Positions 4,784 through 38,910 of a stretch of DNA of 64,000 nt are shown in pieces (positions within the stretch are counted from its first letter, which is position 1; every line of letters begins with the position of its first letter). Below the pieces are notes generated by a model. It saw only the letters and a list, made by a program, of their open reading frames with translations. It was not told the DNA's origin and searched no databases. A program made the position numbers and the translations under genes. The DNA is taken from the NCBI GenBank assembly GCA_012026655.1, contig JAAILG010000218.1, positions 1-64,000 of the forward strand. Direction: 5' to 3'. This DNA comes from Hydrolagus affinis. Lineage: Eukaryota.

Positions 4784-5038
4784 CTCATCTGCTTGTGTGA
4801 TCACAACGGATGGTATGCAGCTACTTCTGTCATCTTTTTCATCTTCAAGCACAGCTTCCTCTGTTCCTGCCTGAGTTGATGGATCCAAAACCCACCATTC
4901 CAGCAGGTTTGCTGGAGCTTCGTCAGGGACGTCAGTGTCAACACATCTCTTTGAATCATCTACAAAAGCTGACAATGTCGCTTCCTCGACTCCAAATGTA
5001 CCATCGCTAGCTGGTTTAAGGACAACATACTTTGTTCT
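4784..5038 (-). CDS. sowah: Sowah-family gene, coding exon 3 (RTKYVVLKPASDG...IPSVVITQADE)
   Basis: Polypyrimidine acceptor ttttctcttttcaaatag|AGA at 5039/5038 and donor GAG|gtatgt at 4784/4783. 255 nt, phase 0/0, no stops. TKYVVLK matches the end of the SOWAH N-terminal conserved domain. Confidence 0.8.
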
Positions 5039-5984
5039 CTATTTGAAAAGAGAAAATAAAACAAAACATTAAAAAAAACTATACAAACAGTCATGCTTTA
5101 AACAAAAGATTATAATGCTTTTTGGTTTCGGCATTCCATTAATAAATCTTCAGTAAGCTGTGCTGGTTGTCATTGTAACAAGGTAAGGTAGTCTCCATTT
5201 ATCTATCTTTAAATTTCGCAAATTTAGGAGGGCTATTGCCTCATTTAGATGTGGTTAAGTAGTACTGTATTGCCTTTGGATTATCTTTTTTTCCTTAATG
5301 CTGCATTAATATTATTGGCTGTTCAAGTCACAATTCAAAGCCATTGAAAGAAGCCTTAATAAGACGATGATGCTTTTTACAGAAAATATATACAACTACT
5401 CTACAATTCTATAAAATCTCTTCCACCAGAACTAAAGAAAATTTCAAATTTAGTGTAATGGTATTTGCTTGTGACTTTGATGATTACTAACTTTATTTTG
5501 AATAAATAAGTTTTGTAATTCTAAAATGAATATGTAATATACATAAAAAACTGAGGATGATATTTTATCCATGAGTTTTAGATATGGTTAGAACAAAATG
5601 CAGCTATGATTTACTCCTGGAATTCATCATTGAGCTTCACCATGAATAAGATGGGTAAAAATGATAGAATTTTTTTTACTGATATCTGACAATGTAATAT
5701 GTCATCATATGATCTAAATACAGCTTTCACGTAGGTATTAATTCCATAATAACATACCCACTGATTTATTGCATTTAGTGAAAGTTATAATGAATGGAAT
5801 TTGACACCTACTTGTGTATTGTATGCATTGCTTAATTAGAATTAGTCCCAGATCACTGGAAAATAGTTTTTTTTTTACGATTTACAAGTTCCAATTTATA
5901 TTTGGGGTAGACATCCATCTGCATTGATAATGTTATTTAAAATGTTAGTTTTAAAATGAGTTTATGTTCTGCTGGGAATCTTGA

Positions 5985-6170
5985 CGCATGTGGAAACCCA
6001 TTACCATGTGTTAAGAGTATCCAAACCAAACTGAGAGCTTGTCATACGTAATGACAACTATGCATGGCAATTTCACTTTATCTGGAATGGGGCGCACATT
6101 CTCCCCCTAGAGGGACTTAGCCAGTTTAACACATTCTGCAAAGTATTGGGCACAGCCTGGGGTTACCAAC
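5985..6170. repeat. unclassified interspersed repeat, copy 2
   Basis: See 590-790; the shared 19-mer is at 6011-6029. Confidence 0.6.
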
Positions 6171-6574
6171 TGAAGCTCTGGATTACAAATCCAGTGCCAA
6201 AATCAACATATTGTAAGCAAAAAGCAATGTAATGAGCCACATCAGTATTTAGGAATCAAGCATACATGTGAGATTTGTTGTACTAATTGCTTGGGACAGA
6301 AAGACCGTCATGTAAATAATATAGCCCCAAGAGTCTGCCATTTTCCTACTACAGTATTCAAAGAATTTTGGTACACTCATCTGAGCGTGACAGTGAATCC
6401 AATGAGGATGATGAAATCTAAAGCAAAAATACACCTGTTTCAGACACTTGTGTAGACCCCATTCTGAACACTTCCTTAACAATTATATCCCTTTCAAATA
6501 CAGATATACATGAATCCACCCTTCTTAGGTTTGCATTTGCTTTATTTTTCTTCAAAAAATAATAATTTCTTAAA

Positions 6575-6752
6575 AAAAATAATAAATTGGCCACTCAATC
6601 CACAACTATTTGTGGCACACTGCTGTGAGCAATTGGCTGCCACGTTTCGACCACAAAATATACAGTCAATTCCCTTTAAAGGTATTAGCTGTGAAGCGCT
6701 TTACGAAATTACAGATGTGAAAGAAATTATATCAAATGCAAAGATGATTATT
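6575..6752 (+). mobile_element. Deu-domain SINE, 3' part
   Basis: tttgtggcacactgctgtgagcaattggctgccacgtttc...gtgaagcgcttt...atcaaatgcaaagatgattatt. Confidence 0.85.
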
Positions 6753-8836
6753 CATTTTCCTGGTTAGTATTTATTTAAACTAAGCACATTTTCTGTGCAC
6801 TTGCAGGTCTTATTACAGGTTTTAAATAAGCATGAATCCTTCTGTGGTCAAAGTCTGGGCTCTTATGCTTTGGCAACCTGAACACAAAGATCCTCTTCAG
6901 TCCTGGTATGTTTAATAAATGATCTTGGCTTTTTTCCTTTCTCATTGGAGGTTTTTTTTTCTTTCAAACTATTTTGTGATCTACTGATGAGTATTATTGA
7001 TTCAAATAATAAACATTTTTTATATGTATATAAATATATAAATCAGAAAATAGGAATTCTGTGCATTTTTTCAATCCATACATATGAAGAATAAAAATAG
7101 AAATTAACATACTGTTTCATCTGTCTCAGAAATTTCATCAAATGTCAACAACAATCACAAATGAATTTGGTGGAATGATTCAACACTGGGAGTCAATCGT
7201 CCTTCAGTGCATTTTCAAACTGGTTATCTTCTTCAGAGATTTTCAATTCTTTCCTTTGAAATCTGGAGATCTTGCCCAAAGGGGAATTTTAAATGGATAA
7301 AAACACAAATGCCTACTAGTTAGACAGATGTGCCACACAGAATTGGATAATAGAGCCCTTTTTGTTTGTACATTCAATAGTTAATAGGTGAGTTTTCTCC
7401 ATGGTTCATTTGGGCCTTTGGAGCCTTGTAATGTAATTGTTTGTCTTAATCGCCCAGGTGGAACACCATATCTTCTTTCTAATACAATGCAATGACCAAC
7501 TCTGAACAAGTCTCATTGATACATCTTACTTTTTTTAAATCTCTGCTTTATAGAGTACTGTATCTTCATTATTTGCTGCTTTGTGGCCTTTAAGATTTCA
7601 TAAAATAAGTTGAATCTGTTGTAGTACAGTATTTGGTTTCCTTCTGGGATCAGAAATACATATTTACCTTCACGGCTGACTGCTGGCTAGGCTGAGGTTT
7701 CTTTCTAGCCTCTTAATCTCTGTTCTTCCTGGTGGGCTGTCTGATTCCAAATTACTTTATAAAGGATCAACACTATCCACGCTGACCACATGACTCCTGT
7801 CTGATGACTTCCTGGGGCTGCTTATCCTGGATGATGGTTGCTTCAGGGTGGTTGCTCTTTTTCCAGTGGCAGTCATCCATCATTCAGTTTAACCAATGTT
7901 TCTCCTGGACTCTCCTTCGCAGATCATTCTAACTCTCACCAGTCTTGGTTGGTTTGTTGCCTTTTGCAAGAGGAATTTTTAATGATTTTTTTTTCCCTTG
8001 CCTAATTTGATTTAAGTAATTTGGTTGATAGTAGCGATCCACTGGTGATGAAACTGTAATATACTGTTTAAATTGGCCATCTAGATCTTTTTAAAGCTTT
8101 TCCTATCATTGCTTTTTAAGCATTAATCACTCTTCTTCAAATGATAAGTGTTTATCATGCTAACGTTGTTACTCTTCAAAATATACACCTTTTCACTGGC
8201 TTCTACCATTTATAAGCTATTAAGATCATCCTCCTGAATTCAAACCAACATCTGTAATTCACCTTACTTCCGTGCAATGTCTACTGCTGCCCTCACTTAC
8301 ACTCAAGATCACAGTAGGGATTTGCCGAACACTAATAACAGTTCATATATTCAGTTCATTTGCACCTTAGCTGCATCATAATATTGCAATAAACAAATCC
8401 TGAAGCATCTTGGGTAGAGATGGCCAGATGTGCTGCACTCATTTGAAGCTTGAACATCAGTTTAATGTGCACTATACCCACGTTAAACTGTTTTGAAAGT
8501 GATTTCAAGCTGTGTATTCAGGGATCAGTTTTATTCTGCTTCACTGTCAGTTTCTGCACTAAACACAGAATTCAATGCTACTTACATAAAGTTGCAAATG
8601 TAGACGATATGAAACTCTAAGCTGGTGTAAATCATGCTCAGAAAAACTGTACATACAATTGCAGAAAAATCATTCTAATTAATTTAGTTGTAGATTTTGT
8701 TTCAAAGTAGAATTTATTCCCCATGAATATGCAGTTGATAAGTAGCTTTGCACACTTTTTTTCAAATTCTCCTCTTTGGAACATTCCATTCTGGACAAAC
8801 AAAGGACATGTGAGTGTTTTGAGTTTCAGCCTAAAG

Positions 8837-8869
8837 TACTGTTCCTAAATTGGCCACAAGGAGGTGCCT
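8837..8869 (+). promoter_or_regulatory. CTCF site with putative upstream (U) motif
   Basis: Core tggccacaaggaggtgcc (8851-8868) closely matches TGGCCASYAGRKGGCRS, and tactgttcc lies ~5 bp upstream. Confidence 0.65.
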
Positions 8870-11676
8870 GATAGTACTGTAGGTTGGCTTGCCCGCTATT
8901 AGCTACATGCCCCTGAGAGAGCCTGGCAGAGTATCACAAGGGAAGTCCTTATCCTACCACTGAACACCATCTGAGGTCACATTCACTAATCGCTGTGCAA
9001 CCAGGCCATCAGCTGCTGTTTTTCTCTCAAAACTGTCATAAAGATGTACTTATCAAACTTTTACATGTCCATTGCTGAGTATTAAACAGCAAACATTCAA
9101 TCTCAAACATCAAATACACACTATAAAACACAATTGCTCTGAAACGAAAAAACCCACAAGAAACAGCCAATGGTTCATACTAATCAGACTCTAATCTGTT
9201 GTGATAGGCAATTTTTTATTAAATACTGCCATATTTTGTGACCTTACATTTGCGTGAACAATTTCATTTACTATCAAGAGTACCAAAGGGCAACTGTGTT
9301 ATAATTCAAGCATAGAGGCTGTAAAACCCAGACACACTAAATGTGACAATGCATTGAAAGAAGCTGGCATAAAGCAAGAGTGAAAGGTTTGTATGCTGTC
9401 ACAGAGATGATCCACACGCCCTAATTATGGAGAATTGCCTTCAAAAATCTGACACAAATGTTAGGCTAAATTAAATGTTGTCTAATTAACTAACGTATAC
9501 AAGACTTCAAAGTAAACCATCTCCATGTTGTTTAGTGACCAATGAGAACAAAAATGCCTGAGAATTATCAGTCAACACAGACTTCCAATCTCAGCTGACT
9601 GTTACAAGGTTATACTGTTTCATTTCCATGCATCTATTCCTTTACCGCACTGTTTGTACAATTTACAGAAAAAGTCAACATGGTAAACAGTTTCACACAA
9701 TGAAGTGTGAAGGCTGATAGAATGGTATTCAATGGCTCTGAACTCCCCTGATGAGCTGCCAGAAGTCGTTATGAATGGACCAGCTGATGGGCTGATGACT
9801 GATAAAGGCAAACCAAACAGCATTGGTAATTTGAGAAAACATTTGCCACTATGACAACCGAAAGCACTGTGACAGTTACTCAGATAGGGATTTTTGAAAA
9901 ATAATATTCACCATTTATGTATTCCCTTCATATATTTTACACTACTGTAATTATAGCTATCTCTGAAATTGCCTTGAGAGATCTGTTTGTCCTTTGGGTG
10001 TCTTTTCTGACAGTATTACTGATACTAAAGTCTTACCATTTATCTCTATGATCTGCACAAGAACTTTGCTCTAGGTAAAACAATATGACATAATTACAGT
10101 TTTTCAGTTCATATAAAGAAAATCTTTAAGGGCACTGGTTACCACACAGATTTTATTTTGCATACTAAATGAAAAGGATTAAAAAAAAATTAATATAAAA
10201 CTAGAAATACTATGCACAAGAAATTAGATTCATTCCATAAAGCAAAATGAGAAATTATACCAACTTTCTTTGTTTATTAAAATATAACCATTTTCTGGTC
10301 TGGTTCAATGCAAGTCATGTTATCTTCACATTTCACATGGGTAAAATGTATTCAAACAAATTAGCAACTCACTGAGGTCAGCATTTGATTGTATCTTATT
10401 AACTCTGAAAATCCTCAACAATACATTGTATAGCAGTTATGGTTGACTTCTCTTTCCAGCATAAGGCTTCGAAATATGATTTACATTCAGAATATTAAAT
10501 GGTAGGATTTGTTAATTGAAGCTGATAATGAATTAAAATTGCTTGAATAACAAACTAGTTCAGAAGCTGCCAGCTTGAAGAAGTGGAATTTTCATTAATA
10601 ACTAACATCTATTGTATTTTCATTGTACTCTGAGTCTTAGAAACAATTTTGAAGGATTCCCAATATGCAGCTTGTTAAATACTTTTTGCAGTTTGTTAAA
10701 TATTCAATATTATAGGGGCAATATTTTGCTTGAAACAGACATGTATGTTGACATTTTTAACTACAGTTAAGCACAACTAGGCTGGTTAGAATACAAGTAT
10801 CTGTGATAGTTCTGCAATTGTGCTTTAAATGTATCCAAGACCTCATATTGTGTTCAAACCAAATACTGTTCTACAGTTAATTTAGTGAATGAATTCCCCA
10901 GGGTCTTCAGCTATCTACTACTGCAGCTCATTAGAGCCCAATATCCGACTTTTTGTGTTATATCAGTGAAAGCACTTATGCTCAAAATGCAATTAATCCT
11001 AAAACAAACAAGATCTTTTTGACATCTATGTTTTTACTGACAACATCAAGAACTGATGTTGTGTTAGTTGGTGGGAGCTTCATGTTTCGGGCACTTAAGG
11101 CAAGACATTTGGTCAACTATTCAGCCTTCATGCAATTAGAAATCTTAGTATGTTTGGTAACGCATTACATTTGGGGATTAAACTCGCAGATCTCTTACCA
11201 GCAAATAATGTGGTAAAGCTTGCCATCCAATGAAATGTCTTATTGAAATAGCCCTGACTATTTCTCTTGTCACAGCTGTCGTTACAGCCATTTGCACTTA
11301 CAGTAAATCCCTTTCATTACTGAAATAGAAATTTGTGTCTTAGTACTGCTACATTAATAATGCTAAATATTTAATTCCCTAGTGTGCTAATTATGGTTGA
11401 GTACTGGCAACACTGATTCTAGTTTTTAATAACTAACAGCAATATGAGCATTTTTCAATTAATTAAACACAATGTACGAGTAACCTCTTGTCATTTTGCC
11501 CTCTAGGACTTTGACTAATTTATGCTGGATAAAACATTTTCAAATCAACTGTTACTACATTACATTTCCTGGTCTTTCAATGCATGGCTTTATGTATTTG
11601 TCTGTAAAATAAAACTGGTTGTTTTAGAAAAGTAGACATATAATTGATAAAATGTATATTTAAACTGCTACACTGA

Positions 11677-11878
11677 TAATAAGAATCCTTGCATTTGATG
11701 TAGCATCTTTCATACAAGGAGGATGGTCTGAAGTTGCTTCACAGGATTTACTGTAAAGTGCATTTTGTAGGCAAATATGGCAGCCATTTGGTGCACGGCA
11801 GTGTCAGTGTCCCACAAACAGCCATGAGTGAATGACCAATTTTATCTGAGGTATTGTTGGCTAGGACCCTGGGAGAAA
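11677..11878 (-). mobile_element. Deu-domain SINE fragment (older subfamily)
   Basis: aatccttgcatttgat...ggcagccatttggtgcacggcagtgtc..tcccacaaacagccatgag. Confidence 0.8.
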
Positions 11879-13541
11879 TTCAATGATGACAACAAGAAGG
11901 AAGGAAAGTAACAATTCGGATAGGCCAAAGGAAAATTAATTATAAAAACAACAGGATAAGATTGGTTTTATTTGAATTATTAGAGTTGAAGTAATTAACT
12001 AGATGCACAGGCTTGTGTGTTAGAGTGCAAATCACTTTCTTGGTAGATTTGAAAGCTGTAACTGGCAAAATAAGTGCTCTATTCAATCATGGTTAAACAT
12101 TGATGCATACTGACCTACAGTGCAATGTTCAAATGCTGCTTTCCAACACAATTCTGATGGATACAAATTTAAAAACATAGCTCCTGACCTGATCTTTAAC
12201 AAATTTCAATGCAAGCCAGCTTTTTGGAATGAGCATGTTAAATTAGCACTTCCAAAATGGAATCAGTTCACACATCCCACAGAGCACTGCAACACATGTT
12301 GATTGGGGAATATCTGGTGATTCATATGTGTGCGTGGCATACCTCAACTGTTACACAAAATGCATGTGGTTTGAGGTACCATTCTTGCCCAAATCAATGC
12401 CTCTGAAAGAGAGTTGTTTAAATAGAATGGAGAATGAAAATGAAGTCAAGGGATTCAAACAAAGTGGAATGAAATTCAAACATTGTGTTCATGACACCAG
12501 ACACATCACGTTTGCACAAGCAGATGTGCATCAGTAGGGTTCACGTGTATTTCCATATTAAAAATACATGTATGTAGATATATATATAATATATATATCT
12601 TATTCCATTTTTATCTCATTTTAGTTTCATGCTCTGCCAAACCATCCTGTTTCAGTCAAAATCACTACACAGCCTGAACCATGGCAATCAGTGTTGTAGC
12701 TACTTCCAGCAGCCTAACAGGAAGTCAAATCCCCTTGTGTGGGATAGGTCTCTGTTGCCTCCTCCTATGCTGGGTTGAGCACTTAACTATAACAAAGCAC
12801 TACACGTAAAAAAAAAAAGCTGAAACACAGTAACATTTGCCTCAAAACAAGAACCACATTTTGAAAATTTATCAGCCTGTGAGTCAAACTCATTCTCTGG
12901 CTGGGCATGTGCGCCCCAATCATTGATTTAAAATATATTTTATTAGATGTCATTTTGGACCCATATCTATCATAATAAACTGTTCCCATGTTGAATATTT
13001 ACTGATTCGTTGATGGACATAATAAATGGGTCATCTTGCGGCTACAGTGGAAACTTCACAAACGGAAGATTATAGTTTTCGGGTACAGGAATGCTCTGCT
13101 CAAATCTGCTCCTCACCAAAGAGCTTTGTGAGAAGCTCCTGGATGGAATTCATTAAAACAAACTGCAGAGAATTATGATGAATTGAACAACCTTGTGTGT
13201 TTGTCTATTTTTATTCTTTTTCTCTATTTTTGTTGTTTTTCTCTTAAGAGGGGAAAAAACTTTGATATTCAATGTAATAGCAGTCAGTTGTCGATAGCCC
13301 TGTTGTTTCTATTATTCCAAATGGGTCTTAAACAAAAATCAGTATTGTGTCTCCATGAGACTGGTTTAGATGCTCCAATGCAAAATATATCCTTTCACAA
13401 AGGGACAGTGCAATTATTTTAATTCAAGTTTTCTTTCAAGCAGTTTATTTTGTATTGTTCAGTTCATCTTTTAATCCTATATTTGAGCAAGTCAGAATTC
13501 ACCGACTGAAGGCAATTCAAAGACAGTTAAAATAATAGTAA

Positions 13542-13630
13542 AAATAATAATAATCCTTGCATTTGATATAGTGCCTTATCATGTCACAATTTACTGTGTC
13601 ATTTGAGACGTCTCAAATCACTTCATAGGA
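13542..13630 (-). mobile_element. SINE 3' tail fragment
   Basis: aataataataatccttgcatttgatatagtgcc...gacgtctcaaatcacttca. Confidence 0.7.
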
Positions 13631-14849
13631 ATTAGGTGTAACAATTATTTATTCTAAACAGTATCATAACTGGATAAATAATTCAGTAATGTTTGCCTTG
13701 AGTACAGTACCTTTTTGCTTTAAACTATCTTATTAGTAGTTTCCATGTTATTTTTCTCATTAACATTTGAAAGGTTTTCAATGCAAATTTGTTCAATAGA
13801 ATAATTACTGGATCTACATTTACCCAAACTGGATTTTCTTAGGTGAGGAAGTGACAGCTGGTTGATTGGCTGACAACATACCATTGTTGCAAGTAGTGAT
13901 CAGTGCATGTAGTCCTTCAGGAATTCTAAGCTTTGAGGAATAAGAAATATACACTTCAAATCAGTTGCTAAAGGAAAAAGTTAGAATGGCAGCTTCTGTT
14001 TATAAATAAAAACCCTTAATTAGAATATCTGCACTGCTGGTTCAACAGGTTATATCTCTGCAATAAAAATGGGCATTTTATGATATATTGGAAACATAAT
14101 CACATGTAACTGCAGAAAAGTGAGCTTAGAAAATCTATGTTAAACAGAGTATATGAAAGAGAAAGAATAAACCTAATAGAGAACACATAAGGTTAATGTT
14201 GTTTTTCTATATTTTCTGTCTGATTAACCGATTAAAATGCTGCTCCTCACCGCACCTCTGGCTTGCTTTTTCTACACTGATCAAATTCAAAACTGCTCCA
14301 GAGACAAACAAATCCCTCTGAGTGAAACTGCCTGTGTTTTCTTAACTGGCTGTTTCCAGAATAGTGAGAAGCAGCTTAGCTTTTCACATCTATAAAATCC
14401 TATAGCATTGCTGAAAGAAGAGGAAGCACAAGTCAAACCACCTAGTGTTAAGCTGTGAAAAGCAAACCTTTAGTGGAGTAATTACATGCAACACTGCTCT
14501 ACAACAGATTTGTCAGAGTTGCCTGCTAATGTAAATATGGCTGAGCTTAACACTATTTCTACTAATACAGTACTTTATAATTCTACTCTTTGGAAAGTGG
14601 GTTGCTTGTTGTGAATGATGTTTGCATTAGGCACCACCCATCCACCAGTAAATAACTCTCCCAATCATTTGATGCAATGTGCCTTTAAATTTATGTTGAC
14701 AACCTCCACTAAAACCTAATCAATTTCCCTTTGATGTTCTTACCGAGCCCTCTCTCTAATGACATACATTCAGCCACGGTAACTATTTGTAACACAGATG
14801 TTTCAATATGTAAACAGCAAATAATTACAAAGAATAGATTTGGTGATGC

Positions 14850-14932
14850 TACTACAACAACTACAACAACAACAAAATTACATTTGTATCATGCCTTTCA
14901 AGTCGGGAGGACATACCAAGGCGCTGGACAGT
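14850..14932 (-). mobile_element. L2 3' tail fragment
   Basis: (caa)n followed by gcctttcaagtcgggaggacataccaaggcgctg, the reverse complement of the tail at ~478-541. Confidence 0.75.
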
Positions 14933-16352
14933 CAAATGTTCAGGAATCTCACCAAACATATTGGGTTCAAACAAAATTGTTCAGTCGGAAGGGCCATATA
15001 CAAACTTTAGTAATGCAAATAATAATCCTTGCATTTGCAACCACTGAGACATCTCAAAGCGCTTCAGATTCTACTGCAAATATAGTGGATAGACTGTGCA
15101 TTTTGTGGTAAAATTGTGTAAGGATCCACTTTTGCAGTCTCAAATTGCACAACTTCCCCTCTCCTTCATGAGATTCTTAACTTAAAATTAGATTGCCAGG
15201 ATCCCGACCCCCTGTTTTAAACATTTAGCTCTTTAAAATAAATTCTCAAAGCTGTTTGATATTATGGTAGGATTCTATTATAAACCAATGTAGAAATTGG
15301 AGCCTGGGATTTCTGCAGATCTAAGACAGATGAGAGAAACTTGATAAGACAACCTGCAAATAAAATAGTAAAACTGAAACATCTTGGAGTGACTGAGAGA
15401 GTACAAATCTCATGACATTTTGTTGGATACAGGTACATACACTTGTTCAATAATGAATCTGCACAAATTTTTAATTTTCTAAATGTAAACTTGAATCAAA
15501 TTTGATGGTAATAATCCAGCAAGGCACTAGCACATTGTTTGCAGTTATTTTCATGAAAGTTTACAGGTTACAAATGGTAGTCAGCATGGCCCGCCTTGAA
15601 AGATTGTTGTCATAAATTATTTTAAGAACAAGGATAGCTTAACTTTAATGATCCAGGGGTACTAGATACTAGACTGTATGTACACAAATACACAAACACT
15701 CATGGATGGTAGTGCCCATGTTCAGTTACAATGGCTCAAGTTTCCAATCTAAGTCTTGTCATCAGTAGCAAGAACTGAGCAGAAAACAGTATCTGAAACC
15801 TGGACGCATCACACGGCAAGTTAGCCAAGGATGCTTCCACACATGCTGTTGTTATATTAACACTGGAATTAGTGAGCTGCATTAAACAGTGTCTCATTCA
15901 CTTTGGCAGGGTTATCAGTTGTACTTGAATTCCAAAATTAAGAACACCACTGTGCACCACTATCACATACATGTAAGCTGTCGGGAGTCCAGAGAGAGTA
16001 CCCATTGCGTGTGTGGTCCACTTCATGCCAGTAAATAATAAGGCAGTTTCACAATATACGTCATCATGCCAAATATCTTGGTGGGATGCTCTCCCAGCTC
16101 CAGCTAGGTTACTGGAAAGTGCTATTCTAAAATCAGGCGTCTATGTAGATACTCTCATTGGAGACTGAGCAGGTGAATTGGAGTGTTATTTGGCTGCTCT
16201 GCACTTAGATTTTGGCATCTTGTTACTGGCACAAATTCAGCATAAAAATCAGACGACTGTATAACACGCCTGTTTACCTAGTACTGTAGCAAACAGGAAC
16301 CCAATTGTTAGTCGATTGGTGCATCAGTATTCCGAGGATCAGAATCCTTAGT

Positions 16353-16516
16353 AAAAAAAATAATAATTTTGTCAATTCATGGCTGTTTGTGGGAAACTGC
16401 CACGTTTCTCCCACAAAATATACAGTCAATTCACTTTATAATATATGCTGTGAGGCGCTTTGAGAAGTATCAAAGATGTGATGAGGCACTATATCAAATG
16501 CAAGGATTATTATTAT
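16353..16516 (+). mobile_element. Deu-domain SINE, 3' part
   Basis: ggctgtttgtgggaaactgccacgtttc...tatcaaatgcaaggattattatt. Confidence 0.85.
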
Positions 16517-27830: not shown

Positions 27831-28094
27831 TCCAAACATCTTAAAGTTAGTGCAATAATAGAAGGATATTAAGCAGGATCTTCATTGTTAATACAGCAAC
27901 ATGTTTCACAACTGGAGCAGGTTCCCAAATGAAGCTATCTATGCATGAGTAGTCTAGTCAGATATTTCAGGTAAGAATGGATCAACATATATAGAAAGGG
28001 AGCCTAAATGTGCAGTAACAGTGGTGTGACAGAATGCAGCATTGATTAAATAAACTCCTGTGTTGCTAGGGTTTCAGGCCTCCCTTAAAGAGAT

Positions 28095-28535
28095 TGCTCC
28101 GCCTCATCCCATCCCTTGCCTCCTTCAAGCACCTCCTCCTTATGATAATAATAATAATCCTTGCATTTGATAAAGCACTTTTCACATCTTCTAGACATCT
28201 CAAAGCACTTCACAGAATATAATGTAAAGTGAATTACATTTGTGGGTGAAATGTGGCAGCCGATTGCGCACAGCAGTGTCCCACAAACTGTCTTGGATTG
28301 AAATGACCAATGTTTTTTTTTGAAGAATTCTTATTAGGCATGCGGAGTAAGGAAATTTGCCTAAGGTTTCACCCTAATTTGCTTTTATTTGACCATGCTT
28401 TTGATCTACCTCCTTCCGCCTCTGCCCTCCACCCTCCCCAATTCCTACTCCAGCTCAGAGTACTGTCTGTCCAGTGCCTTGGGAAGTCCTCAAGATATGA
28501 AAGATGCGATACAAATGTAATTTTGTTGATGTTGC
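28095..28535 (+). mobile_element. L2 3' fragment interrupted by an antisense SINE
   Basis: ctccgcctc...tccttcaagcacctcctc resumes after the SINE as tttgaccatgctttt...ccagtgccttgggaagtcctc...tgaaagatgcgatacaaatg...gttg. Confidence 0.65.
28146..28376 (-). mobile_element. Deu-domain SINE (5'-truncated)
   Basis: (aat)n ccttgcatttga...ggcagccgattgcgcacagcagtgtcccacaaac...ttattaggcatgcggagtaaggaaatttgcc. Confidence 0.9.
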
Positions 28536-31500
28536 TCACCTATCTTCTGGAATCGAGAAGAAATTTTCCATACCAGCCTTGGGATTTCTTGGTTTTCTCT
28601 ATCTTTTTCTGAAAAGGTGGTGTGGGAGAGGAAGAGGTGACACCCGGGTGACCAATAAACAATAAAGAATAGTCCAAGTACTGTATTGGGTGTGATGGAC
28701 AATAATGTCTATCACAATGATTTGAAATCTTGTAGTACACTAAAACAATTAGAAAAAAAGTGATTATAAAAGTTGATATTGTGCAAACCGATGCAATTTT
28801 TCAATACACTTTGCAAATTTTGCAATAAAATAAATGGGACATATGGCCCACCAAAAGTGCAATTGCTTCCCAGCAGTTAGCATACTACAGTACAATGGCA
28901 CTTTTCCAATAGCTACTTTTCTTTCACTTAACTAATAAAAAAAACTTTTGAAATCTAATCCCATGAGTCAATGTAAGTCAAAAAAGTACTTTACTTAATT
29001 AAAAATTTTAAGTCATTAGCAGACTTACTTTCAGCCTGTAGTAATATTTGAGATGTAAGGATTTCAAGCTTATTATATATTGCAGCAATTATAAATTGGC
29101 ACCTTGAATTCCATGTATAATTTTAAAAAATTCAATAATGACTAGAATCACTTTGCTGATGAAACAGGCCACAGATTTTTTTCTGTTTCATCAGCAACAC
29201 TAAGTTTACAGCACTACCCAATCTGGTTACAATAAAGAAATAAAACAAACATTATAACAGATGTTGGATTTAATAAACTGAATATTTTAAATGTGTGAAT
29301 ATTTTAAAAAGGTTTAGTGGGTTAATTCAAAACACTTATAAATAATTGGAATGAACAAAGATAGTGTCATTGTAACAAACCAAATAAATGAGAACGAAAT
29401 CATATGAATATTAATTGTTTTTGAAAATAATATGTTGCCAGATTCCCTCTCAATCCTTACAAATTAAATAACATATTTTACTATTAATGTTAAATAGTGT
29501 CAAAACCACATGTTGGGTGAATAATGTAAATGTATTCCTCTATGCCAAATGTAAACCTTTTATTTGATCATGGCTTTTATAACAGATTGTGACATTTCAA
29601 TGAACTCTCATAAAACAGTGACATATTAGTAGATATGTAACATTGTTTTTGAGACTTTCTCTGATGAAGATCATCTGCTAATCAAACAATGATTGCCTGT
29701 CACATGGTGTTAACAAATGGCACATACACAGTGATAGCACATCTTTAATTCTCCATCACTGCCATTTTAAAACAATACATACAGTACTTAGGTACAGAGC
29801 CTTAATGGTTGCTTAAAATTTAGCAAGTAGAGATTCTGATGCAGGTAGAGATTCTGGTGTAGACATATTCTAAGTAGAAGAATATATTCCTTCATCTTCC
29901 AAAACTCGTGTTCAATATTTTTTGCTATGAATGCACCTGTTGTGCAAAAATACCAACTTAATACTATAAAAATATACATTATCCTGACAAATACCAGTGC
30001 GATATGTCAAACCTGAGTTTATTCCACAAGAATGATACAAATGTATTTTCCTAATCTGATCTACTTATATAATAATTATACTGTACTTGCATTTGATACA
30101 GTGTCATATAAATATGTCTAGGTGCCTTGGTGTCAGGCTCCTCCACGGTCAAGTACTGTACTCTGAAACACTACACTAATCATAATGCTTCATGGGATAC
30201 ACCGCAGAAGTGGTGTGACTGTATTTTTGGCCAAAAGCACAATTCTCATATCACATCATAGATTTGATTTACAATATGATTTCTTTCCCATTAACACTTT
30301 TCATGCTTCTTGATTTATTTTGCATTGATAACAGTATTGAGCTTGTTTTAAACTATTGCAACAAAACAATTGCCTTCTAAGACTATGCTACCATTTAGTG
30401 TTTGACTTCTGGCCTGCTTAAGTCTCGATTGGATCACTGCAGACCTGACTGGTTTTGCGAAGCATCTCTCCTTAAGGTCAGTTGAACCCAAGCAAAATCC
30501 TGCTAACCTCACTTCTCCCAAATATCCAGATATTTTAAACCTTGCAACCATTTTATCATCCGTAAAAGGGTACATTATAGTATATTCAAACCAGCTCAAC
30601 TAAATTACCTGGGATATTAGGTTATGAACTGTGATCAATTTGGTGTCTTAGATATGGACTGCCTTCAGTCAGCTGAACAAATAAAGCAGTGATCAGATCA
30701 ATTTGCATCTCAGAAAGACACGAGGAAGAAAAAGGTTGTGCTGAAGAGATCAAGAAAATTATCATCATCGAAGGTATATGATCTCTGAGGGAGATTTTGG
30801 TGGACTTTAAATTGATATGGATCGAGCTCATCGAGAGATCATCATCATTTTTATGAATTTGTAAATGAAACTTACATTGGTATCAGTGACCTGGTTCTTA
30901 AGGAAGATCACAATTGATGTGATACTTTCATGAATAGGCCTGAACTCATCATAATCGGACCTCAATTTCTTGTTAATCAATCATTGGTTTCTGGGAATCT
31001 AGCTGTCGCTGGACACTAATTTTTAAGACTGGGTTGTACACTACTTTTTAAATAAAACCATTACCCCCAATTTTCTAACTTGTCTTTACTATTTTCGTTA
31101 CGAAGATTAAGGTGATTAATATTTTGAAGGGGAGAATAAGAAATACAAAGAAAAATATTATTAACGGGACTATAACATGAAAGTCCTCAGCTCTACAAAA
31201 TATATTTAACTAGGTTTTCTTCCATGATGTATATGGAGTTGTCATACACATGTATAATATTAGTCAGCCTACAAATATTTTGTAACAAAATTACAAAAAG
31301 AACACAGGACAAAATAAAAAACTTTATAAATATAAATGTCTTTATTTGTGAATTTTAAACAGTGTTTAATGTTTTCACTATTACACTCTGTGGCACAAAA
31401 TAGCACTAAATATTAAAAATGGGTGAAAGACTGTACCATGACATCATGACATCACTGGTTCTCAAGTTAGTGAAACCCAACAAATAAATTTGTTGAAGTC

Positions 31501-32153
31501 ATGCATTTGGATTTTAAATGGATGGAGAGAAACATTCTCTATATATAACAAAGAGACAAAATTCCATCTCACACATATTTATGTTAAAATAAGTTCACAA
31601 ACAGAATGGCGATTTTGCTAGACATGAACACAGTTCTCGATTTAAAAAAAACTTTCTTCCAACACTACATTAAAAGAGTTGCAGCCAATATTTCTGCTTT
31701 CATGACATACTCTCACATTTGTTCATGCTGTTAATTAATATAATCATAAACACCTATTTAGACATTCCGAGTCTAACCACCGTTATCAATCTTAACAACC
31801 ACAAAATCCATGATTTACACTTAAATATACACTCAATGATAAGACATTAATAATCTTGCTTCTATATAATAATGTCAATACATCTAAACAGGTTGTAAAG
31901 CAAACTAAGTTGGAAGTGAACCGAATTTAATATAATTATAATTATACTCAATGTTCTAACATTAATTGAAATGCAACCTGAAGTTTTTGATCAAATTACA
32001 TAACAACCCACCAAAAATGTATGTTGTAAATACATATGAGTATATACATTAATCTTTTGCCTATAAATGGACATAAGCCAAAAATATTGTAAGAACATAA
32101 GAATTTGCTAGACAAAAGAAGACCAGTAACCTTCCATCAACCTGGAAGTCACT

Positions 32154-32484
32154 TAATAATAATAATAATCCTTGCATTTGATACAGCGCTTTTCATATCT
32201 TATCGACATCTCAAAGCGCTTCACAGAATATACTGTAAAGTGAATTAACTGTATATTTGATGGGCGAAAAGCAGCAGCCAATTGCGCACGGCAGTGTCCC
32301 ACAAACAGTCGTGGATTGAAATGACCAATTTTTATTGTTGTGTTTTTTTTGTTCGACGGATTTTTATTAGGCATGTGGAGTAAGGAAACATGCCCACAGT
32401 TTTGCCCTGATCTGCCTTGATTCAAACACAGGTTTCACTCTTGTAAGGCCAGTACTCTAACTGCTAAGCTACAGGAACTCCACA
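32154..32484 (-). mobile_element. full-length tRNA-headed Deu-type SINE
   Basis: Reverse complement aligns end to end with 17192-17550, including the head gtggagttcctgtagcttagcagttagag. Confidence 0.9.
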
Positions 32485-33579
32485 CTTGATATGTTGTGTC
32501 CCAAACTATGTACAATAACTTACTGGGTAGCCCTTCCTGGGTAGCTTCTTGGAGTGCTTAAACTGTATCCCAAGATACTATTTTCTGGCAGAAATGATTC
32601 CAATTTGTTCTTGAAACAAACAAAATTTCTGCTTCCGGTATTATTATCATTATTGTTGAGCACATGTAACATTTTGATCATTGCATTTGTTCCAAAACCT
32701 GAAATAAACGACTGGATCTGAAAAGATCAAAGAATCACATATATGAGCAAACAACTAAAGTAATTACAGCTAATCCATGGATAGTTTTCACTATTCTTGA
32801 TGAATCATTGTTCATTTAATTCATTGATCTTTTATAGCCAAAATACATTTAAAAAATGCTTGTAGAATTAATCTTTGACAATGAATCAGTACAATAAAGT
32901 TAGGATAAAATTAAATGAATGTCAGACTGGACTCTACAAGTTAAGATGAAGTATATTTAGCATGATGGATATCCTATAGTGATTACAAGGTAGTAATCCC
33001 ATTAACAGGTTCAGATGACGTCATAACCACAAGAGTGGAACTCAAGCACTTGACAACTGTCATTTGAACCCCACAACAAGATTACAACCTTGAAATCATT
33101 TCCATGCATTCATTGGTTTAATAATTCAATTTCACAAGATGAAGGGGTGCTTTGGTTCTATTTTTTTCTTCATAGTGGATATTAAAGCACATAACAAGAC
33201 CCATAGCATTTCACATAGTTTATGTTTGATGACAGTTACACTGTTCTGTTAATACCACTACCCATTTATTGATTGATAACCAAAAATTAATCACTGCAAT
33301 ATGTCCTTGAGGTTTCATTAGAAAAATATCATCAAACTCACATTTTTCTACTTAAATACTGAGGGTGTGGGAAATGTGGGAAATATAACTGTTAATCTGT
33401 GTTTCATTCATTTCAATGGCACATTCCAATTTTCAACAGAATTTACAAATATTTTAATCATTAAATGGCTTCTGCTACACTCCCGTTTTCACATTAAAAT
33501 CTCATAAATTCCAAACGTCAATTTTTTTTTAATACCAACTATTCTCTATGCTGACTTTCCAGTGAAAATTGAAGGAGAA

Positions 33580-33885
33580 CTGCATTGTTGGAGGTGCCAT
33601 CCTTCAGATCATACATTAAACTCTATCAACCTATTCAGGTGGATGTTAAAGAACTCATTGTACAATTCAAAAAGAGAAGAGGGATTCTTCTGGTGAAGTG
33701 GTCAATAATCCTTCAGAGAAATTGGTCACTTGCCTCCTGGCTGTTTGTAGAACCTTCTGTATGCAAACTGACTGTTATGTTTGCTTAAACATACACAATC
33801 ACTGCTTTTTCTAGCACTTACCTGTGAAGGACTTTGAGAAGTTGGGATATTACTGGAGCTATATCAAATGCAATGGTTATTATTA
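33580..33885 (+). mobile_element. Deu-domain SINE, older subfamily
   Basis: gcattgttggaggtgccatccttcaga...tcaggtggatgttaaaga...ggctgtttgtag...ctatatcaaatgcaatggttattatt. Confidence 0.75.
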
Positions 33886-35650
33886 GGAGAATTATTATTT
33901 CATTAGGGAATAAGATGAAAATCTACTCATCCCTAGAAAAGCTTTGACCACGTGCTCAATGTACTTTTCCTGAGGATTTGCTCTTTTGGACACTTTTAGT
34001 TAGAGTAATGCTGCTTCAAACCCTTTACATAGTGGCTTGTGTGGCTATCTGTAATGAGTATGTGGACCACAAGGGACTAATTAATATCCTACCGCCAGTA
34101 GAAGCTACTTGTAATCGATAAGCAGCTCATTTGAGGTAAAGACATTTTTTCTGTCGAGTAGTGTATACCGGAGCTGTAATTTGAGGTCAGAATTGTGTTT
34201 TTGAAAATATGAACCGGTCCCACCCTTCCGCACCAGTCAGTGGTATTAACTGTACCTATAATTTGTCATTTCTCTAGTTAGGATGTTCAGTTCCTAATTT
34301 TGACATGTAACTGAGAGGTAAGAGCCCTGGAGGACACATCGAATATCAAGTATATGTCCTTAGACAGGCTGCAAAATAGCAATACGTGAACTGTTCCCAA
34401 GGCATTTTTTCACCCATCACTACACAAACATATCAACAAACAAATCCATCATCAGCTAAACCACCCATGCGCAATTATATAGGAAGTAGAAGTGACATCC
34501 TCAAAGAGTTGGTTTCGATCCCAACAAAAATATGGTTGACAACTCATTGCATTAAACCCTTAGTTATTTTTAAATATAGTGTTGTAATACCAAACATGGA
34601 CAATTCATGAAAGTTATGAAAAGTATTGTAGCTGTCTTTATGACCTTTAGTTTTCTATTATGTGCTGTAAATTATATGTAATTTTCTATTTTCTGACTGA
34701 CAAACAGGAAACAAAAGTCATAATTTGGGAAGATACTTGGACTGTTACTATAGGACACAAAACCACAACTCTTTAATAAATCTATACAAGCTAGTATTTT
34801 AAAATTATAAAGAACTCAAAAAACATAGAATCATTACTGGACAACAAAATATTCTTCCAAATAGGATTTGGGTTATTGTTCTTAACTTATGCAAAATTAT
34901 ATTTTCATATTTCCAGAGTTACCAAAAAATACAAAGAAATTTTAAAACACGTAGTAATTAAGATTTCAATAGATACTGTACTGTATTTAGAAAATTAATT
35001 CATTATTTTTTGTAAATCAATTATGTCTTTAGAGTTTCTGATTCTTGAAAGAGTCTCCCTAATCACTTTGTGGTGGAATTTATTCCAAATGATAAATATG
35101 AAGTCCTTAAAATACTGTAAGACAGTATTGGTAACACTGCAATACTGTATACAGTACTTTAAATGCTTCCAGCACTGTGTAAAGTAATGATGATGTTCAA
35201 ATGCCAGGAAATGTCAACATCATAACATTTACCCTTAAAAGTCACAATAGGAGCTTGATATGTTGGGAGTACATCTTTAAATAAAAACACATCAAAATAA
35301 ATATCAATGTAGCAAAAACACTATTCTCATTGATCAATTGATAAACTTTATATTGAAACAGAATGTTTACTTACATGTGTTTATATTTATTTACATTTGT
35401 TTACCAAAGCAATACTGCATTTTCGAAACAAATTAAACCATGAAGGAAATGGACAAATGTGGGGTCACAAATCCAACTGCAGATGCTGCTTCTGATGACT
35501 TACTTTTTAGTTTTAGAGGGATCCTAATGAATTTTTTTCAACGCTATATGCTGATTATGTCCACACAACACAGCAGACTTGCTAAAACAAAAAGAAATTA
35601 TAATATGATATCTTGCTTATATTGAACAGAAATCAACAGAACAGCCTTAC

Positions 35651-35712
35651 CTCTTCTTCAGTGATAATACCAACTTTTGAAAGGACATCTCTGAATTGTT
35701 TTCGGTTTCTGT
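35651..35712 (-). CDS. sowah: Sowah-family gene, coding exon 2 ((D)RNRKQFRDVLSKVGIITEEE)
   Basis: Acceptor atttttag|AC at 35713/35712 and donor GAG|gtaagg at 35651/35650. 62 nt, phase 1 in and 0 out, joining exons 1 and 3 in frame. Matches the SOWAH 'R..FK.FVN.VA.V' segment. Confidence 0.8.
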
Positions 35713-38299
35713 CTAAAAATAAGATATTAAAAAAAGTTTATTTTATTAAAAAGCTTTCATTGCCAGGTGGATATATGCAAAGATATTAGTTATTGGTTTA
35801 ACGATAACTAAGTTACTGATAAAAACAGTTCAGCGCAAAATGTTTTATTTTTCCTTTATTAGTGTATTATCCTGGGAGTCAATAACCATCATACATTCTC
35901 CTTTCTCCAGGATAGGATGATCTGGACCTCCATTCATGTTCATCACAATGATTATCCTACAGGAGGTGCATTTACAGTCAGGCGAGCCAAATATGTCAGT
36001 TTTAATACCCCCTCCCCACCACCCCACCTCCCTCAACTTGTCCAAGGTGGAACATCTTGCCATAGCATGGGGCTCCATCTACTGTAGCATCCCAGCCAAG
36101 AAATGATGAAGTTCACTCCAAACAGTGGCAGACAAACTTGACTGGCAGACACAACTGGCACTCCAACCCACAACCATCTGTTTGTGAGGCAAGTACTTTA
36201 CCACCTGTGCTAGCAATGTACATAATAACTATACATCTTTGTTACAGAATTCCAAGATTTCAAAGGTGCAATTGAACAAGCATACATGGAATTAAAAACA
36301 TTATGATTTCTGGAGGGAAATATAATTTCATTAAAATGATATCAGTGTTTATATCAATAAATATTTGAAGTGTTACTGACGTGCTCCTATAATCTAAGCA
36401 CAGAGACTGGGCATAAAGGCATGATGTTACTTAGAGAACACAGCTCAGTGAGAAAATAAAAGGCTTCCATTTCTGTTCACTCTTACCTTTAGGCAAAGAT
36501 GAAATTAAAACAGTAGCCACACCAATATCAACTTCTATCTAGAAAACATCCTTATTATTTGAGTGTTGCAACAATTGTTGCTCATTTTACAATTTGGGAC
36601 AGATTTATATAAAAAATACACCTTGGCTACACAAAACAATTGATAACAGACTCTTTTTTTAAGTTATTTTCCATTTTCCAGCACTAAAACAACCTGAAAA
36701 TAAAAGTGACTCCACAAACAATTATAGTAATCCACTTATAAAAGAATACCAAAAGATGTGACAGTTCTTACACTAATTTGATCAGTGATTTTCTATAGCA
36801 AGTGGAAATTTTGATTTTCTAAAAGTTACTACATAATGAGTGCAGTACTGTACTGCATTATATAATAATTATTGTCAAATGAAAATAAATCTCAATACCA
36901 TTATCTAAAGACAATCTTAGAGGTTATATAATATATTTTATTTTTTTAATCATATTGTGCCAGAATAATTTGTCCCAACTCATCAATGTGTAAATTCATT
37001 GTTAAAGTTTCAGAAGAATACACATATTGCTGATCAATACTAACATTATCTATCCATTTTGGTCATGTTTGTTTTGCAAAACATAACTGACTAGAAACTG
37101 TGTGATTCACTGCAAATCTGCATTGTTTGATTTAAGTAAATTTAAGCTTCATATAATGGTAGGAGCAGACATTTTTGCATCAGAACAAGTTTTCCAACTG
37201 AATAGTTAAATGCTACCCTCAATGCTCAATGTTAAACACAAATTGATTCATACTGTAACAAAGTTCATATAATTCACATTTTAATATTTAAAAATATTAA
37301 AGAGTTAAAGTCAATATTTAACAGATGAAGTAGCCAATTAAATAGCAATAGCTAATTACTGATATATCTTAGTACAAGTTTCAGATTTGGAAAATACAAA
37401 TATTAATGTAGCTCTTACATTGCCAATATACAAATTATTATGAAACTATAATGCTATTAGTATTTATTTTGGATATCTCTAAATATTCAACGGATTATTA
37501 ACAGAATATGCAACACCATTTAAATGGTCCATTTTAGTCCACCGAGTACTTTGTATTTCTATTCAACGGTAATAAAAGTAGGTTTGTTCTTTTTGACATG
37601 TCCTGCTGTAATTGTATGCCTGAAAAGTAAAATTGCAGACACGAATATAGCGGAATTAAACTACAGTAATTCAATAAGCTAATTTGCAAACTTTACACAG
37701 ACGTGCTCTCAAATACTGTGCTGTAGGGAAAAAATTACAATTAAAATAAAAAAAAGTCAGTTAATCTTAGCGGAAAGGAAAATGTAACTTTCCAGCAATT
37801 GAAGCACCACATAAAACCGAGAAAAATCTGTTTACTCAAAATGCTGCTGAAGAGTGCCAGTTTAATCAAAGCAAGCAATGTGGTCCGTAATCAGGGCCAT
37901 TATAAAATAAGGAGCAAGTTTCCGTTGACGGCCCTGAAGCGTGTACGAAAAGAACAGCAGTTTCACGATTACTTTCCGTGTCCTAACAAAATCACACGGA
38001 CAACTTCAATGTCTCTCTCGCTCTCTCTGCCTGTCCATCTCTATATACTGTATATAGGTTTCATGCTATTCTAATGACGTCGAAAATAAAACTAAATGCA
38101 AACGCGGAGAATTAATTGCTGGCCATTCCTCCCGAATTCGGAGGCAGTACAGGAACGATTAATTGTCCAATGAATTGATGAAGAAGAAGACGAAAATAGA
38201 AAATAAAACGAACAAACACGAGTTCAAAGCCTCCGGGCTAATCCCAGGGATTTAAACTGCGTTTAAAAAACACAGACAGCAGGATAGCAGCGACTGTCA

Positions 38300-38910
38300 C
38301 CCACTTACTTACTTACCCCTGACGTCTGGCGCGGCGTGGTACAAAACCGTCTCAAACATGTTGACCAGTTCTGCATATTTTATCTTGCCCCCTCTGTCGT
38401 GGAGTAGAGTGAGAATAAAATCCACCTTCGGCTCCTGCGATGCCGCCGAGGTCATCCTCCCCCTCCTCCTCCTCCTTCTTCTTCGTTGCAGCGTCTCCTC
38501 CTTCCCGCTCACACCGCACTTCCGGTCGCCAACCGCGTTACCTCGGCAACGATGCAGCAGCCCGGAGGAGCTCGTTTCGTCACCGAATTACCAATATGCA
38601 AATGAGGCAGCCCGGACCACCAATCGACGATGATAAGCGTGGGAGGAGCGGGGAAAGGCAATGCGGCGCGCTGCATCTCGGGACGTATAGTTCTTTGCTT
38701 GCGTTGGCCTGAGGTGGGGGGAGGGGGGGGTGAAGGAAAGGGACTACATCTCCCAGGATGCCTGGTGCCTCCTCTTCACTCCTGCTACTCGTCCATCACT
38801 CCCAGGTTTTCCAGGCAATGGCAAGCCACGTGACTGGCGGTGAGCGTTGGCAGTTGCAGCACCTTCAGAGCCGCCCGCAGCAGGCGCCTTCAGCTCAGCC
38901 TGGCTCCAGA
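38300..38910. promoter_or_regulatory. CpG island / promoter of the Sowah gene
   Basis: Abrupt GC/CpG enrichment. ETS cacttccgg 38517-38525, RFX gttacctcggcaac 38537-38550, CCAAT at 38591 and 38620, octamer atgcaaat 38596-38603, ZNF143-type motifs 38673-38693 (-) and 38741-38762 (+). Confidence 0.75.
38317..38455 (-). CDS. sowah: Sowah-family gene, coding exon 1 (MTSAASQEPKVDFILTLLHDRGGKIKYAELVNMFETVLYHAAPDVR)
   Basis: ATG at 38455 with a purine at -3 inside a CpG island, and donor G|gtaagt at 38317/38316. Resembles the SOWAH N-terminal motif (L.FL...GG.V.N..L...F...L). Confidence 0.82.

What the first reader, a model, noticed from the sequence alone, without database searches (positions are those of the whole stretch)
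4784..38455. Hidden intron-containing Sowah gene inside the IrxB cluster, divergent from Irx5
Three small minus-strand exons with canonical GT/AG sites and matching phases (1, 0) splice into MTSAASQEPKVDFILTLLHDRGGKIKYAELVNMFETVLYHAAPDVR-DRNRKQFRDVLSKVGIITEEE-RTKYVVLKPASDG... This reconstructs the N-terminal domain of SOWAH proteins, whose tetrapod members are intronless retrogenes unlinked to Irx. The Irx-Sowah regulatory block and its loss in tetrapods are established. Here the ancestral bystander gene appears to be still open-framed, with a 30.6 kb intron 2. The 62-nt exon 2 is absent from the ORF track, so the gene is easily mis-annotated.
Basis: partly seen in the sequence, partly recalled or inferred. 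Interest (0 to 1): 0.85.

Follow-up and report, generated by a model that had tools for sequence, protein, structure and literature searches.

The report
Irx5-linked Sowah gene, first exons
The three small exons are real and are the start of the intron-containing Sowah gene that sits head-to-head with Irx5 in cartilaginous and ray-finned fishes, an arrangement that is already published and already annotated in the elephant shark.

Summary
Exons at 38455-38317, 35712-35651 and 5038-4784 (minus strand) have AG/GT borders, phases 1 and 0, and no stops. Searched exon by exon, they match Callorhinchus milii LOC103176098 ("SOWAHC-like") at 89%, 85% and 92% identity. The matches break exactly at the proposed splice sites. 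They match a Heptranchias protein at 70-76%.

The elephant-shark protein belongs to the SOWAH family, with 771 hits. Exon 1 aligns to positions 1-46 of a SOWAH profile at E=2e-9. The neighbouring gene at 44197-46454 (+) is Irx5.

Citing papers state that the Irx-Sowah block is conserved except in tetrapods, and the orthologue is annotated in several fishes. I could not read Maeso 2012 itself.

Three things stay untested. No RNA run exists for this species. The ankyrin exons lie outside the window. dN/dS could not be computed. I never searched the joined peptide.

The scan also noted a Sowah gene on another piece of this genome (s1-906609). Low interest.

The parts
38317..38455 (-). Sowah coding exon 1: the ATG plus 46 codons and 1 extra base. 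It encodes the first half of the winged-helix domain.
   Evidence: It is 41/46 identical to C. milii residues 1-46. hhalign against 15 SOWAH proteins gives E=2e-9 on columns 1-46.
35713..38316 (-). Intron 1 (2,604 nt, GT...AG, phase 1).
   Evidence: The tblastn match breaks at this point.
35651..35712 (-). Sowah exon 2, a 62-nt small exon encoding helix 3 of the winged-helix domain.
   Evidence: It is 17/20 identical to C. milii residues 48-67. hhalign gives E=6.5e-4 on columns 49-66, collinear with exon 1. No mechanical ORF covers it.
5039..35650 (-). Intron 2 (30,612 nt, phase 0). It contains six copies of a SINE-like repeat. A role as home of Irx enhancers is inferred and was not tested.
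4784..5038 (-). Sowah exon 3 (255 nt, 85 codons): the wing strands plus an acidic linker. A GT donor follows, and read-through stops after 9 codons.
   Evidence: It is 78/85 identical to C. milii residues 68-152 and 65/85 identical to Heptranchias.
37500..40000 (.). CpG-rich island over Sowah exon 1 and its upstream side, probably the gene's own promoter.
   Evidence: CpG observed/expected is 0.76-1.14 and GC reaches 0.58, against 0.00-0.11 in the two 500-nt bins to the left (36500-37499) and 0.00-0.54 over 40000-43499.
44197..46454 (+). Irx5 gene, seen as three ORF pieces. It is divergent from Sowah, with start codons 5.7 kb apart.
   Evidence: In one search the named proteins among the best 120 listed (276 hits in all) are IRX5 / irx5a / irx5b or generic labels, and none bears another Irx paralogue's name. 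The homeodomain exon is 134/148 identical to Chiloscyllium Irx5a.

Best explanation
These are the first three coding exons of the intron-containing Sowah paralogue that is linked to the IrxB cluster. It is the orthologue of Callorhinchus milii LOC103176098 ("SOWAHC-like"). It is transcribed from its own CpG-island promoter, away from Irx5.

The exons encode an N-terminal winged-helix domain that is split by two introns, followed by an acidic linker. The ankyrin-repeat exons must lie beyond the left edge of the window.

Shown here: the exon borders, the open frames, the orthology, SOWAH family membership of the N-terminus, and the Irx5 neighbour.

Inferred from the literature and not shown here: the gene persists as a bystander because its large introns, here 30.6 kb, carry Irx enhancers.
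For: - Exon borders and frames are as described.
- Identity to C. milii is 41/46, 17/20 and 78/85 for the three exons, and the matches break at the GT/AG sites.
- Identity to the elasmobranch Heptranchias is 33/46, 14/20 and 65/85. Similarity across the holocephalan-elasmobranch split, which by my recollection is several hundred million years old, implies purifying selection.
- As a yardstick, the C-terminal exon of Irx5 in the same window is 186 of 242 ungapped positions identical to C. milii. That is lower than the Sowah exons.
- The C. milii protein finds 771 relatives, and nearly all the named ones are called SOWAHA/B/C/D. Many carry the precomputed PF25877 label plus ankyrin repeats.
- hhalign of single exons against 15 SOWAH proteins, with no C. 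milii or Heptranchias orthologue among them, gives E=2e-9, 6.5e-4 and 1.3e-6, in collinear order.
- In the AlphaFold2 model of the Heptranchias orthologue, residues 9-77 have pLDDT of about 90 and a winged-helix topology. The best VIA match has Z 8.8 (rmsd 3.1, 67 residues aligned) to the CSB winged helix, 6a6i_G.
- C. milii isoforms differ by cassette segments, so the gene has several exons there.
- Synteny holds elsewhere. The Aldrovandia orthologue AAFF_G00269120 and Irx5 AAFF_G00269130 have consecutive locus tags and the same longest-contig length, 7,080,774 bp. The bowfin orthologue and Irx5a share the longest-contig length 44,214,953 bp.
- Citing papers state that the Irx-Sowah block is conserved except in tetrapods.
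Against: - There is no transcript evidence. The only run that holds the stretch is not on record as RNA. Its contigs gave two tiny pieces and no joints.
- Residues 153 onward, including the ankyrin repeats, are not in the window. A break further downstream cannot be excluded.
- Pfam scans of the single exons gave nothing above cut-off. This means little, because the local library did not report PF25877 for any of 6 SOWAH proteins either.
- The exon 2 profile match is weak on its own (probability 27.6%).
- Foldseek found no match with E <= 0.001; the best was 0.019.
- No conserved non-coding elements were mapped in the introns.
Confidence: 0.9

Rival explanations
1. It is a decaying relic. Only the 5' exons stay open, and the gene is broken or lost further downstream, as reported for the Sowah remnants beside tetrapod Irx clusters.
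For: The ankyrin exons are not seen in the window. No RNA evidence exists. Remnants of pseudogenised Sowah next to Irx in tetrapods are mentioned in a passage of PMC5803294.
Against: All three exons are open with strong splice sites. They are 85-92% identical to an annotated C. milii gene that has full-length ankyrin isoforms. They are better conserved than the C-terminal exon of Irx5 between the same two genomes. A CpG island is kept over exon 1.
Confidence: 0.07
2. It is the promoter and first exons of a non-coding divergent transcript of Irx5, like mammalian CRNDE, and the open frames are incidental.
For: There is a CpG island at exon 1.
Against: Protein-level conservation reaches Heptranchias, gar and bowfin in all three exons. 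The profile matches to SOWAH are collinear. A confident winged-helix fold is predicted for the orthologue.
Confidence: 0.02
3. It is a chance arrangement of short open frames with GT/AG dinucleotides.
For: None beyond the shortness of exon 2.
Against: The tblastn E-values are 3e-46, 4e-22 and 1e-6, and every other row in the 64 kb window has E >= 0.61.
Confidence: 0.01

Closest known systems
Callorhinchus milii LOC103176098 (NCBI: ankyrin repeat domain-containing protein SOWAHC-like, isoforms X2/X4/X6)
   Same: It starts with the same residues, MTSAASQE. The segment borders fall at residues 46/47, 67/68 and 152. Per-exon identity is 89%, 85% and 92%.
   Different: It comes from another species, with 5, 3 and 7 amino-acid differences in the three exons. 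The window shows only residues 1-152 of 374-409.
The Iroquois-Sowah genomic regulatory block (Maeso et al. 2012, Genome Res 22:642; seen only through citing passages)
   Same: A Sowah gene with large introns lies next to an Irx gene in a non-tetrapod (window coordinates).
   Different: Enhancers inside the introns were not tested here. The original paper was not held. I therefore cannot say from a call which fishes, or which Irx cluster, it covered.
The second vertebrate Sowah paralogue (for example C. milii XP_007910542.1 'SOWAHB-like', Scyliorhinus, coelacanth, lungfish, caecilians)
   Same: It has the same architecture: an N-terminal winged helix, a linker and ankyrin repeats.
   Different: It forms a separate clade, with SH-aLRT 100 on each side of the split in a quick tree of 36 rows. 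It is only 14/44 identical to exon 1.
Tetrapod SOWAHA-D retrogenes
   Same: They are the same protein family by name.
   Different: They are said to be intronless and unlinked to Irx (passage in PMC5803294). The gene here has at least two introns and flanks Irx5. No human or other amniote SOWAH sequence was compared here.

Membership tests
SOWAH (sosondowah ankyrin repeat domain) family | N-terminal SOWAHA-C winged-helix domain (PF25877; UniRef names some hits 'SOWAHA-C winged helix-turn-helix domain-containing protein') | tested here: met
   - Exon 1 against a profile of 15 SOWAH proteins: E=2e-9, columns 1-46.
- Exon 2: E=6.5e-4, columns 49-66.
- The invariant Gly, Phe and Leu columns of alignment A1 are present in the exon peptides.
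- The orthologues carry the precomputed PF25877 label.
- A direct Pfam scan was not possible, because the local library did not report this family for any of 6 SOWAH proteins.
SOWAH (sosondowah ankyrin repeat domain) family | Ankyrin repeats in the C-terminal half | not testable with these tools
   No match to residues 153 onward of the C. milii protein exists in the window, so those exons lie outside it. The C. milii orthologue has Ank_2 at E=1.7e-14.
SOWAH (sosondowah ankyrin repeat domain) family | Winged-helix fold of the N-terminal domain | tested here: inconclusive
   The test used the Heptranchias orthologue, not the window's joined peptide. pLDDT is about 90 over residues 9-77 with an H-S-H-H-H-S-S order. 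The top Foldseek rows are mostly winged-helix or winged-helix-type regulator domains, but the best E is 0.019. The best VIA Z is 8.8 and the rest are 7.0 or lower, which the tool calls middling.
Parental (Irx-linked, intron-containing) Sowah gene as opposed to a retrogene | Spliceosomal introns inside the coding sequence | tested here: met
   There are two GT...AG introns of 2,604 and 30,612 nt, and a third donor at 4783. The homology breaks at these sites.
Parental (Irx-linked, intron-containing) Sowah gene as opposed to a retrogene | Physical linkage to an Irx cluster gene | tested here: met
   Irx5 lies at 44197-46454 (+), 5.7 kb from the Sowah ATG at 38455 (-).
Bystander gene of a genomic regulatory block | Conserved non-coding elements or enhancers of the target gene inside the bystander's introns | not tested
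Bystander gene of a genomic regulatory block | The bystander is itself expressed and spliced | not testable with these tools
   One run was listed, and it is not on record as RNA. Laying it gave no joints.

The most novel reading that the evidence does not exclude
The Irx5-linked Sowah lineage may have no lobe-finned descendant at all. In one search, its clade of 16 of 36 tree rows holds only cartilaginous and ray-finned fishes. All 4 sarcopterygian proteins among the 120 listed hits (coelacanth, lungfish and two caecilians) fall in the other paralogue clade.

If so, the IrxB half of the block was dismantled in the sarcopterygian stem, before tetrapods. Tetrapod SOWAH retrogenes would then all derive from the other paralogue. 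The CpG island at the CRNDE-like position would be what remains of this gene's promoter.

This rests on absence from annotated proteins of 225-716 aa, on a quick tree, and on no genomic check.
Probability: 0.3. Interest if true: 0.35.

Novelty: already known. Interest (0 to 1): 0.15.

Why it matters
The finding confirms that this genome keeps the ancestral, intron-containing Sowah gene head-to-head with Irx5. That is useful for annotation, because the 62-nt exon and the 30.6 kb intron are easy for gene finders to miss. The window could also serve as a holocephalan reference for mapping Irx3/Irx5 enhancers inside a bystander gene.

It does not change the picture. Citing papers describe the Irx-Sowah block outside tetrapods, and the orthologue is already annotated in elephant shark, a sevengill shark, gar, bowfin and teleosts.

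Tried and rejected
- **Pfam on single exons.** Nothing was above cut-off; there was only a PaaX match at E 0.16. I do not count this as evidence against, because the library reported PF25877 for none of 6 SOWAH proteins, including one that UniRef names after the domain.
- **phmmer of exon 1 against 1.84 billion representatives.** Three proteins had E <= 0.001. Two are the elephant-shark isoforms. The third, P0003 (E 1.4e-6, 5 stretches, query residues 7-26), is a repeat protein that shares a short motif. I set it aside as unrelated and did not follow it up.
- **Search with region 1-152 of the elephant-shark protein.** Only 5 of 383 candidates passed: 4 C. milii isoforms and Heptranchias. Word-based sensitivity was too low to reach other SOWAH proteins, so I searched with the whole protein and then used profile comparison.
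- **RNA evidence.** The look-up of sequencing runs listed 1 run, not on record as RNA. Read laying put down one 670-letter contig in two pieces of 24 and 18 letters, with no joints. This was uninformative.
- **Maeso et al. 2012.** The paper was not held under its DOI, PMC id or PubMed id. I saw only passages of citing papers: PMC5585340, PMC3342872, PMC5803294, PMC12311624, PMC5010895 and PMC3514665. I also saw passages of Kerner et al. 2009, PMC2674049, which said vertebrate orthologues were unlinked to Irx. Supplements were not opened; those of Maeso 2012 and Kerner 2009 may list the fishes examined.
- **"Not in print".** I make no such claim. Searches found no paper that describes a chimaera or shark Sowah gene model in its own text.
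- **Rfam and tRNA scans of the window.** Both found 0 matches.
- **Species.** The window's species is not known to me. That it is a holocephalan close to Callorhinchus is an inference from the identities.
Full report
**What is in the sequence.** On the minus strand there is an ATG at 38455, followed by 139 nt up to a donor AGG|GTAAGT after 38317. A 62-nt exon lies at 35712-35651, between a pyrimidine-rich acceptor (...TTATTTTTAG|) and a donor GAG|GTAAGG. A 255-nt exon lies at 5038-4784, between ...TTTTCAAATAG| and GAG|GTATGT. The lengths give phases 1 and 0, 152 codons, and introns of 2,604 and 30,612 nt. Reading on past the third donor meets a stop after 9 codons, so further splicing is needed.

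**What the exons match.** A phmmer search of exon 1 (46 aa) against 1.84 billion representative proteins gave 3 proteins with E <= 0.001.
- Two of them (E about 1e-16, 89% identity, residues 1-46) are isoforms of Callorhinchus milii LOC103176098. NCBI names them "uncharacterized protein ... isoform X6" and "ankyrin repeat domain-containing protein SOWAHC-like".
- The third is a repeat protein that shares a short motif. I set it aside.

Exon 2 is 17/20 identical to residues 48-67 of that protein, and exon 3 is 78/85 identical to residues 68-152. In a tblastn of the elephant-shark proteins against the whole window, these three stretches have E between 3e-46 and 1.6e-6, and every other row has E >= 0.61. 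The matches break at the GT/AG sites, and nothing matches residues 153 onward. The elephant-shark isoforms differ by internal cassette segments, so the gene has several exons there too.

**Conservation.** Against the sevengill shark Heptranchias perlo, the three exons are 33/46, 14/20 and 65/85 identical. Against gar they are 20/41, 7/18 and 37/84 over local alignments, and against bowfin 19/41, 6/11 and 34/62. Similarity in all three exons across the split between chimaeras and sharks is what purifying selection on a protein would give. As a yardstick inside the same window, the C-terminal exon of the neighbouring Irx gene is 186 of 242 ungapped positions identical to the elephant-shark protein (186/301 with gaps). 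That is lower than the Sowah exons.

**Family.**
- The 409-aa elephant-shark isoform found 771 proteins with E <= 0.001 among 6,945 candidates. Of the best 120 listed, nearly all named ones are called SOWAHA, B, C or D. Many carry the precomputed PF25877 label together with ankyrin repeats, and UniRef names some of them "SOWAHA-C winged helix-turn-helix domain-containing protein".
- I aligned 15 of these, leaving out the elephant-shark and Heptranchias orthologues, and compared each exon with that profile. Exon 1 aligns to columns 1-46 (E=2e-9, probability 96%). Exon 2 aligns to columns 49-66 (E=6.5e-4, probability only 28%). Exon 3 aligns to columns 128-163 (E=1.3e-6). The order is collinear.
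- A direct Pfam scan of the single exons found nothing above cut-off. This says little, because the local library reported PF25877 for none of 6 SOWAH proteins.
- An AlphaFold2 model of the Heptranchias orthologue, built from a 24-row alignment of public proteins, has pLDDT near 90 for residues 9-77. The order of elements is helix, strand, three helices and a two-strand wing.
- Foldseek gave no match with E <= 0.001. Its best was 0.019, and its top rows are mostly winged-helix or winged-helix-type regulator domains.
- The best VIA-align match has Z 8.8 (rmsd 3.1, 67 residues aligned) to the winged helix of CSB. Forkhead and MarR-type domains follow at Z 6-7, which the tool itself calls middling.

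The N-terminal domain is therefore a SOWAH-type winged helix whose coding sequence is split by the two introns. The ankyrin repeats of the family are seen in the orthologue, but they lie outside this window.

**Surroundings.** ORFs at 44197-44496, 44867-45319 and 45621-46454 on the plus strand are pieces of an Irx gene. The last piece found 276 proteins with E <= 1e-5. The named ones among the best 120 are IRX5, irx5a or irx5b, or carry only generic labels, and none bears another Irx paralogue's name. The homeodomain piece is 134/148 identical to Chiloscyllium Irx5a. Sowah and Irx5 are thus divergent, with start codons 5.7 kb apart. A CpG-rich island (observed/expected 0.76-1.14, GC up to 0.58) spans 37500-40000 over Sowah exon 1. 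It is separate from the one over Irx5, which suggests that Sowah has its own promoter.

The same neighbourhood appears elsewhere. In the teleost Aldrovandia affinis, the orthologue (AAFF_G00269120) and Irx5 (AAFF_G00269130) have consecutive locus tags and the same longest-contig length, 7,080,774 bp. In bowfin, the orthologue and Irx5a share the longest-contig length 44,214,953 bp.

**Paralogy.** A quick maximum-likelihood tree of 36 of the 120 listed proteins splits into two clades, each with SH-aLRT 100. The rows were chosen to span taxa, and unnamed rows and many near-duplicate teleosts were left out.
- One clade, of 16 rows, holds the elephant-shark orthologue, Heptranchias, gar, bowfin and teleosts, including the Aldrovandia gene next to Irx5.
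- The other clade, of 20 rows, holds a second elephant-shark gene, other sharks, ray-finned fishes, and all 4 sarcopterygian proteins in the list (coelacanth, lungfish and two caecilians).

The window therefore carries the IrxB-linked paralogue. The lack of lobe-finned members is only a hint. It rests on annotated proteins of 225-716 aa and on a quick tree.

**Transcripts.** The one public run that holds the stretch is not on record as RNA. Its contigs gave two pieces of 24 and 18 letters and no joints. Expression and splicing in this species therefore remain untested.

**What is known.** I could not read Maeso et al. 2012. Passages of citing papers say the following.
- The Iroquois-Sowah block is conserved across bilaterians "apart from tetrapods" (PMC5585340).
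- In tetrapods the parental gene was pseudogenised and replaced by a retrogene, while Irx regulatory modules remain in its remnants (PMC5803294).
- In Drosophila the large sowah introns house Iroquois enhancers (PMC12311624).
- An earlier paper had stated that vertebrate orthologues are unlinked to Irx (PMC2674049).
- The author list of Maeso 2012, seen in reference lists, includes Ravi and Venkatesh. I recall that the paper treated the elephant shark, but I could not check this.

Together with the public annotation of the orthologue in several fishes, this makes the finding a correct reading of a known arrangement.

**Mechanism and verdict.** Most likely this is a working, spliced Sowah gene that encodes a winged-helix plus ankyrin protein. 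It probably stays next to Irx5 because its 30.6 kb intron holds Irx3/Irx5 enhancers. The first part is well supported for residues 1-152. The enhancer part is taken from the literature and was not tested here.

The rivals are a relic broken further downstream (about 0.07), a non-coding divergent transcript (about 0.02) and chance (refuted). Novelty: already known. Interest: low.

Noticed in passing
window 6558-6759, 16397-16518, 17255-17649, 22447-22624, 28144-28335, 32154-32436, 50399-50585, 60737-60926: A SINE-like interspersed repeat of about 110-290 nt, with copies 75-87% alike on both strands. Six of the eight copies sit in Sowah intron 2. It explains the look-alike ORFs at 17152-17602 and 32153-32425. 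ARAGORN finds no tRNA-like part.
   Followed up: partly
window 37500-40000 and 43500-46500: There are two separate CpG-rich islands, one over Sowah exon 1 and one over Irx5, with CpG-poor DNA between them at 40500-43500. I did not test that.
   Followed up: partly
window 45621-46454 (+): The C-terminal exon of Irx5 lacks the long serine-rich insertions of the elephant-shark UniProt model. There are 59 gap columns in 301. This is either real length variation in a low-complexity tract or a flaw in that model.
   Followed up: no
proteins P0009-P0018, teleost members of the window's Sowah clade: Most teleost orthologues of the Irx5-linked paralogue carry ankyrin labels but no precomputed PF25877 label. 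The Aldrovandia protein shows no match to exon 1 at its N-terminus. The winged-helix domain may be lost, diverged or mis-modelled in teleosts.
   Followed up: no
proteins P0019 and P0039: The caecilian SOWAH-like proteins are listed as isoforms X1 and X4. That would be unexpected for single-exon retrogenes. Their gene structure could not be examined here.
   Followed up: no
window 53061-53160: A run of 100 N.
   Followed up: no
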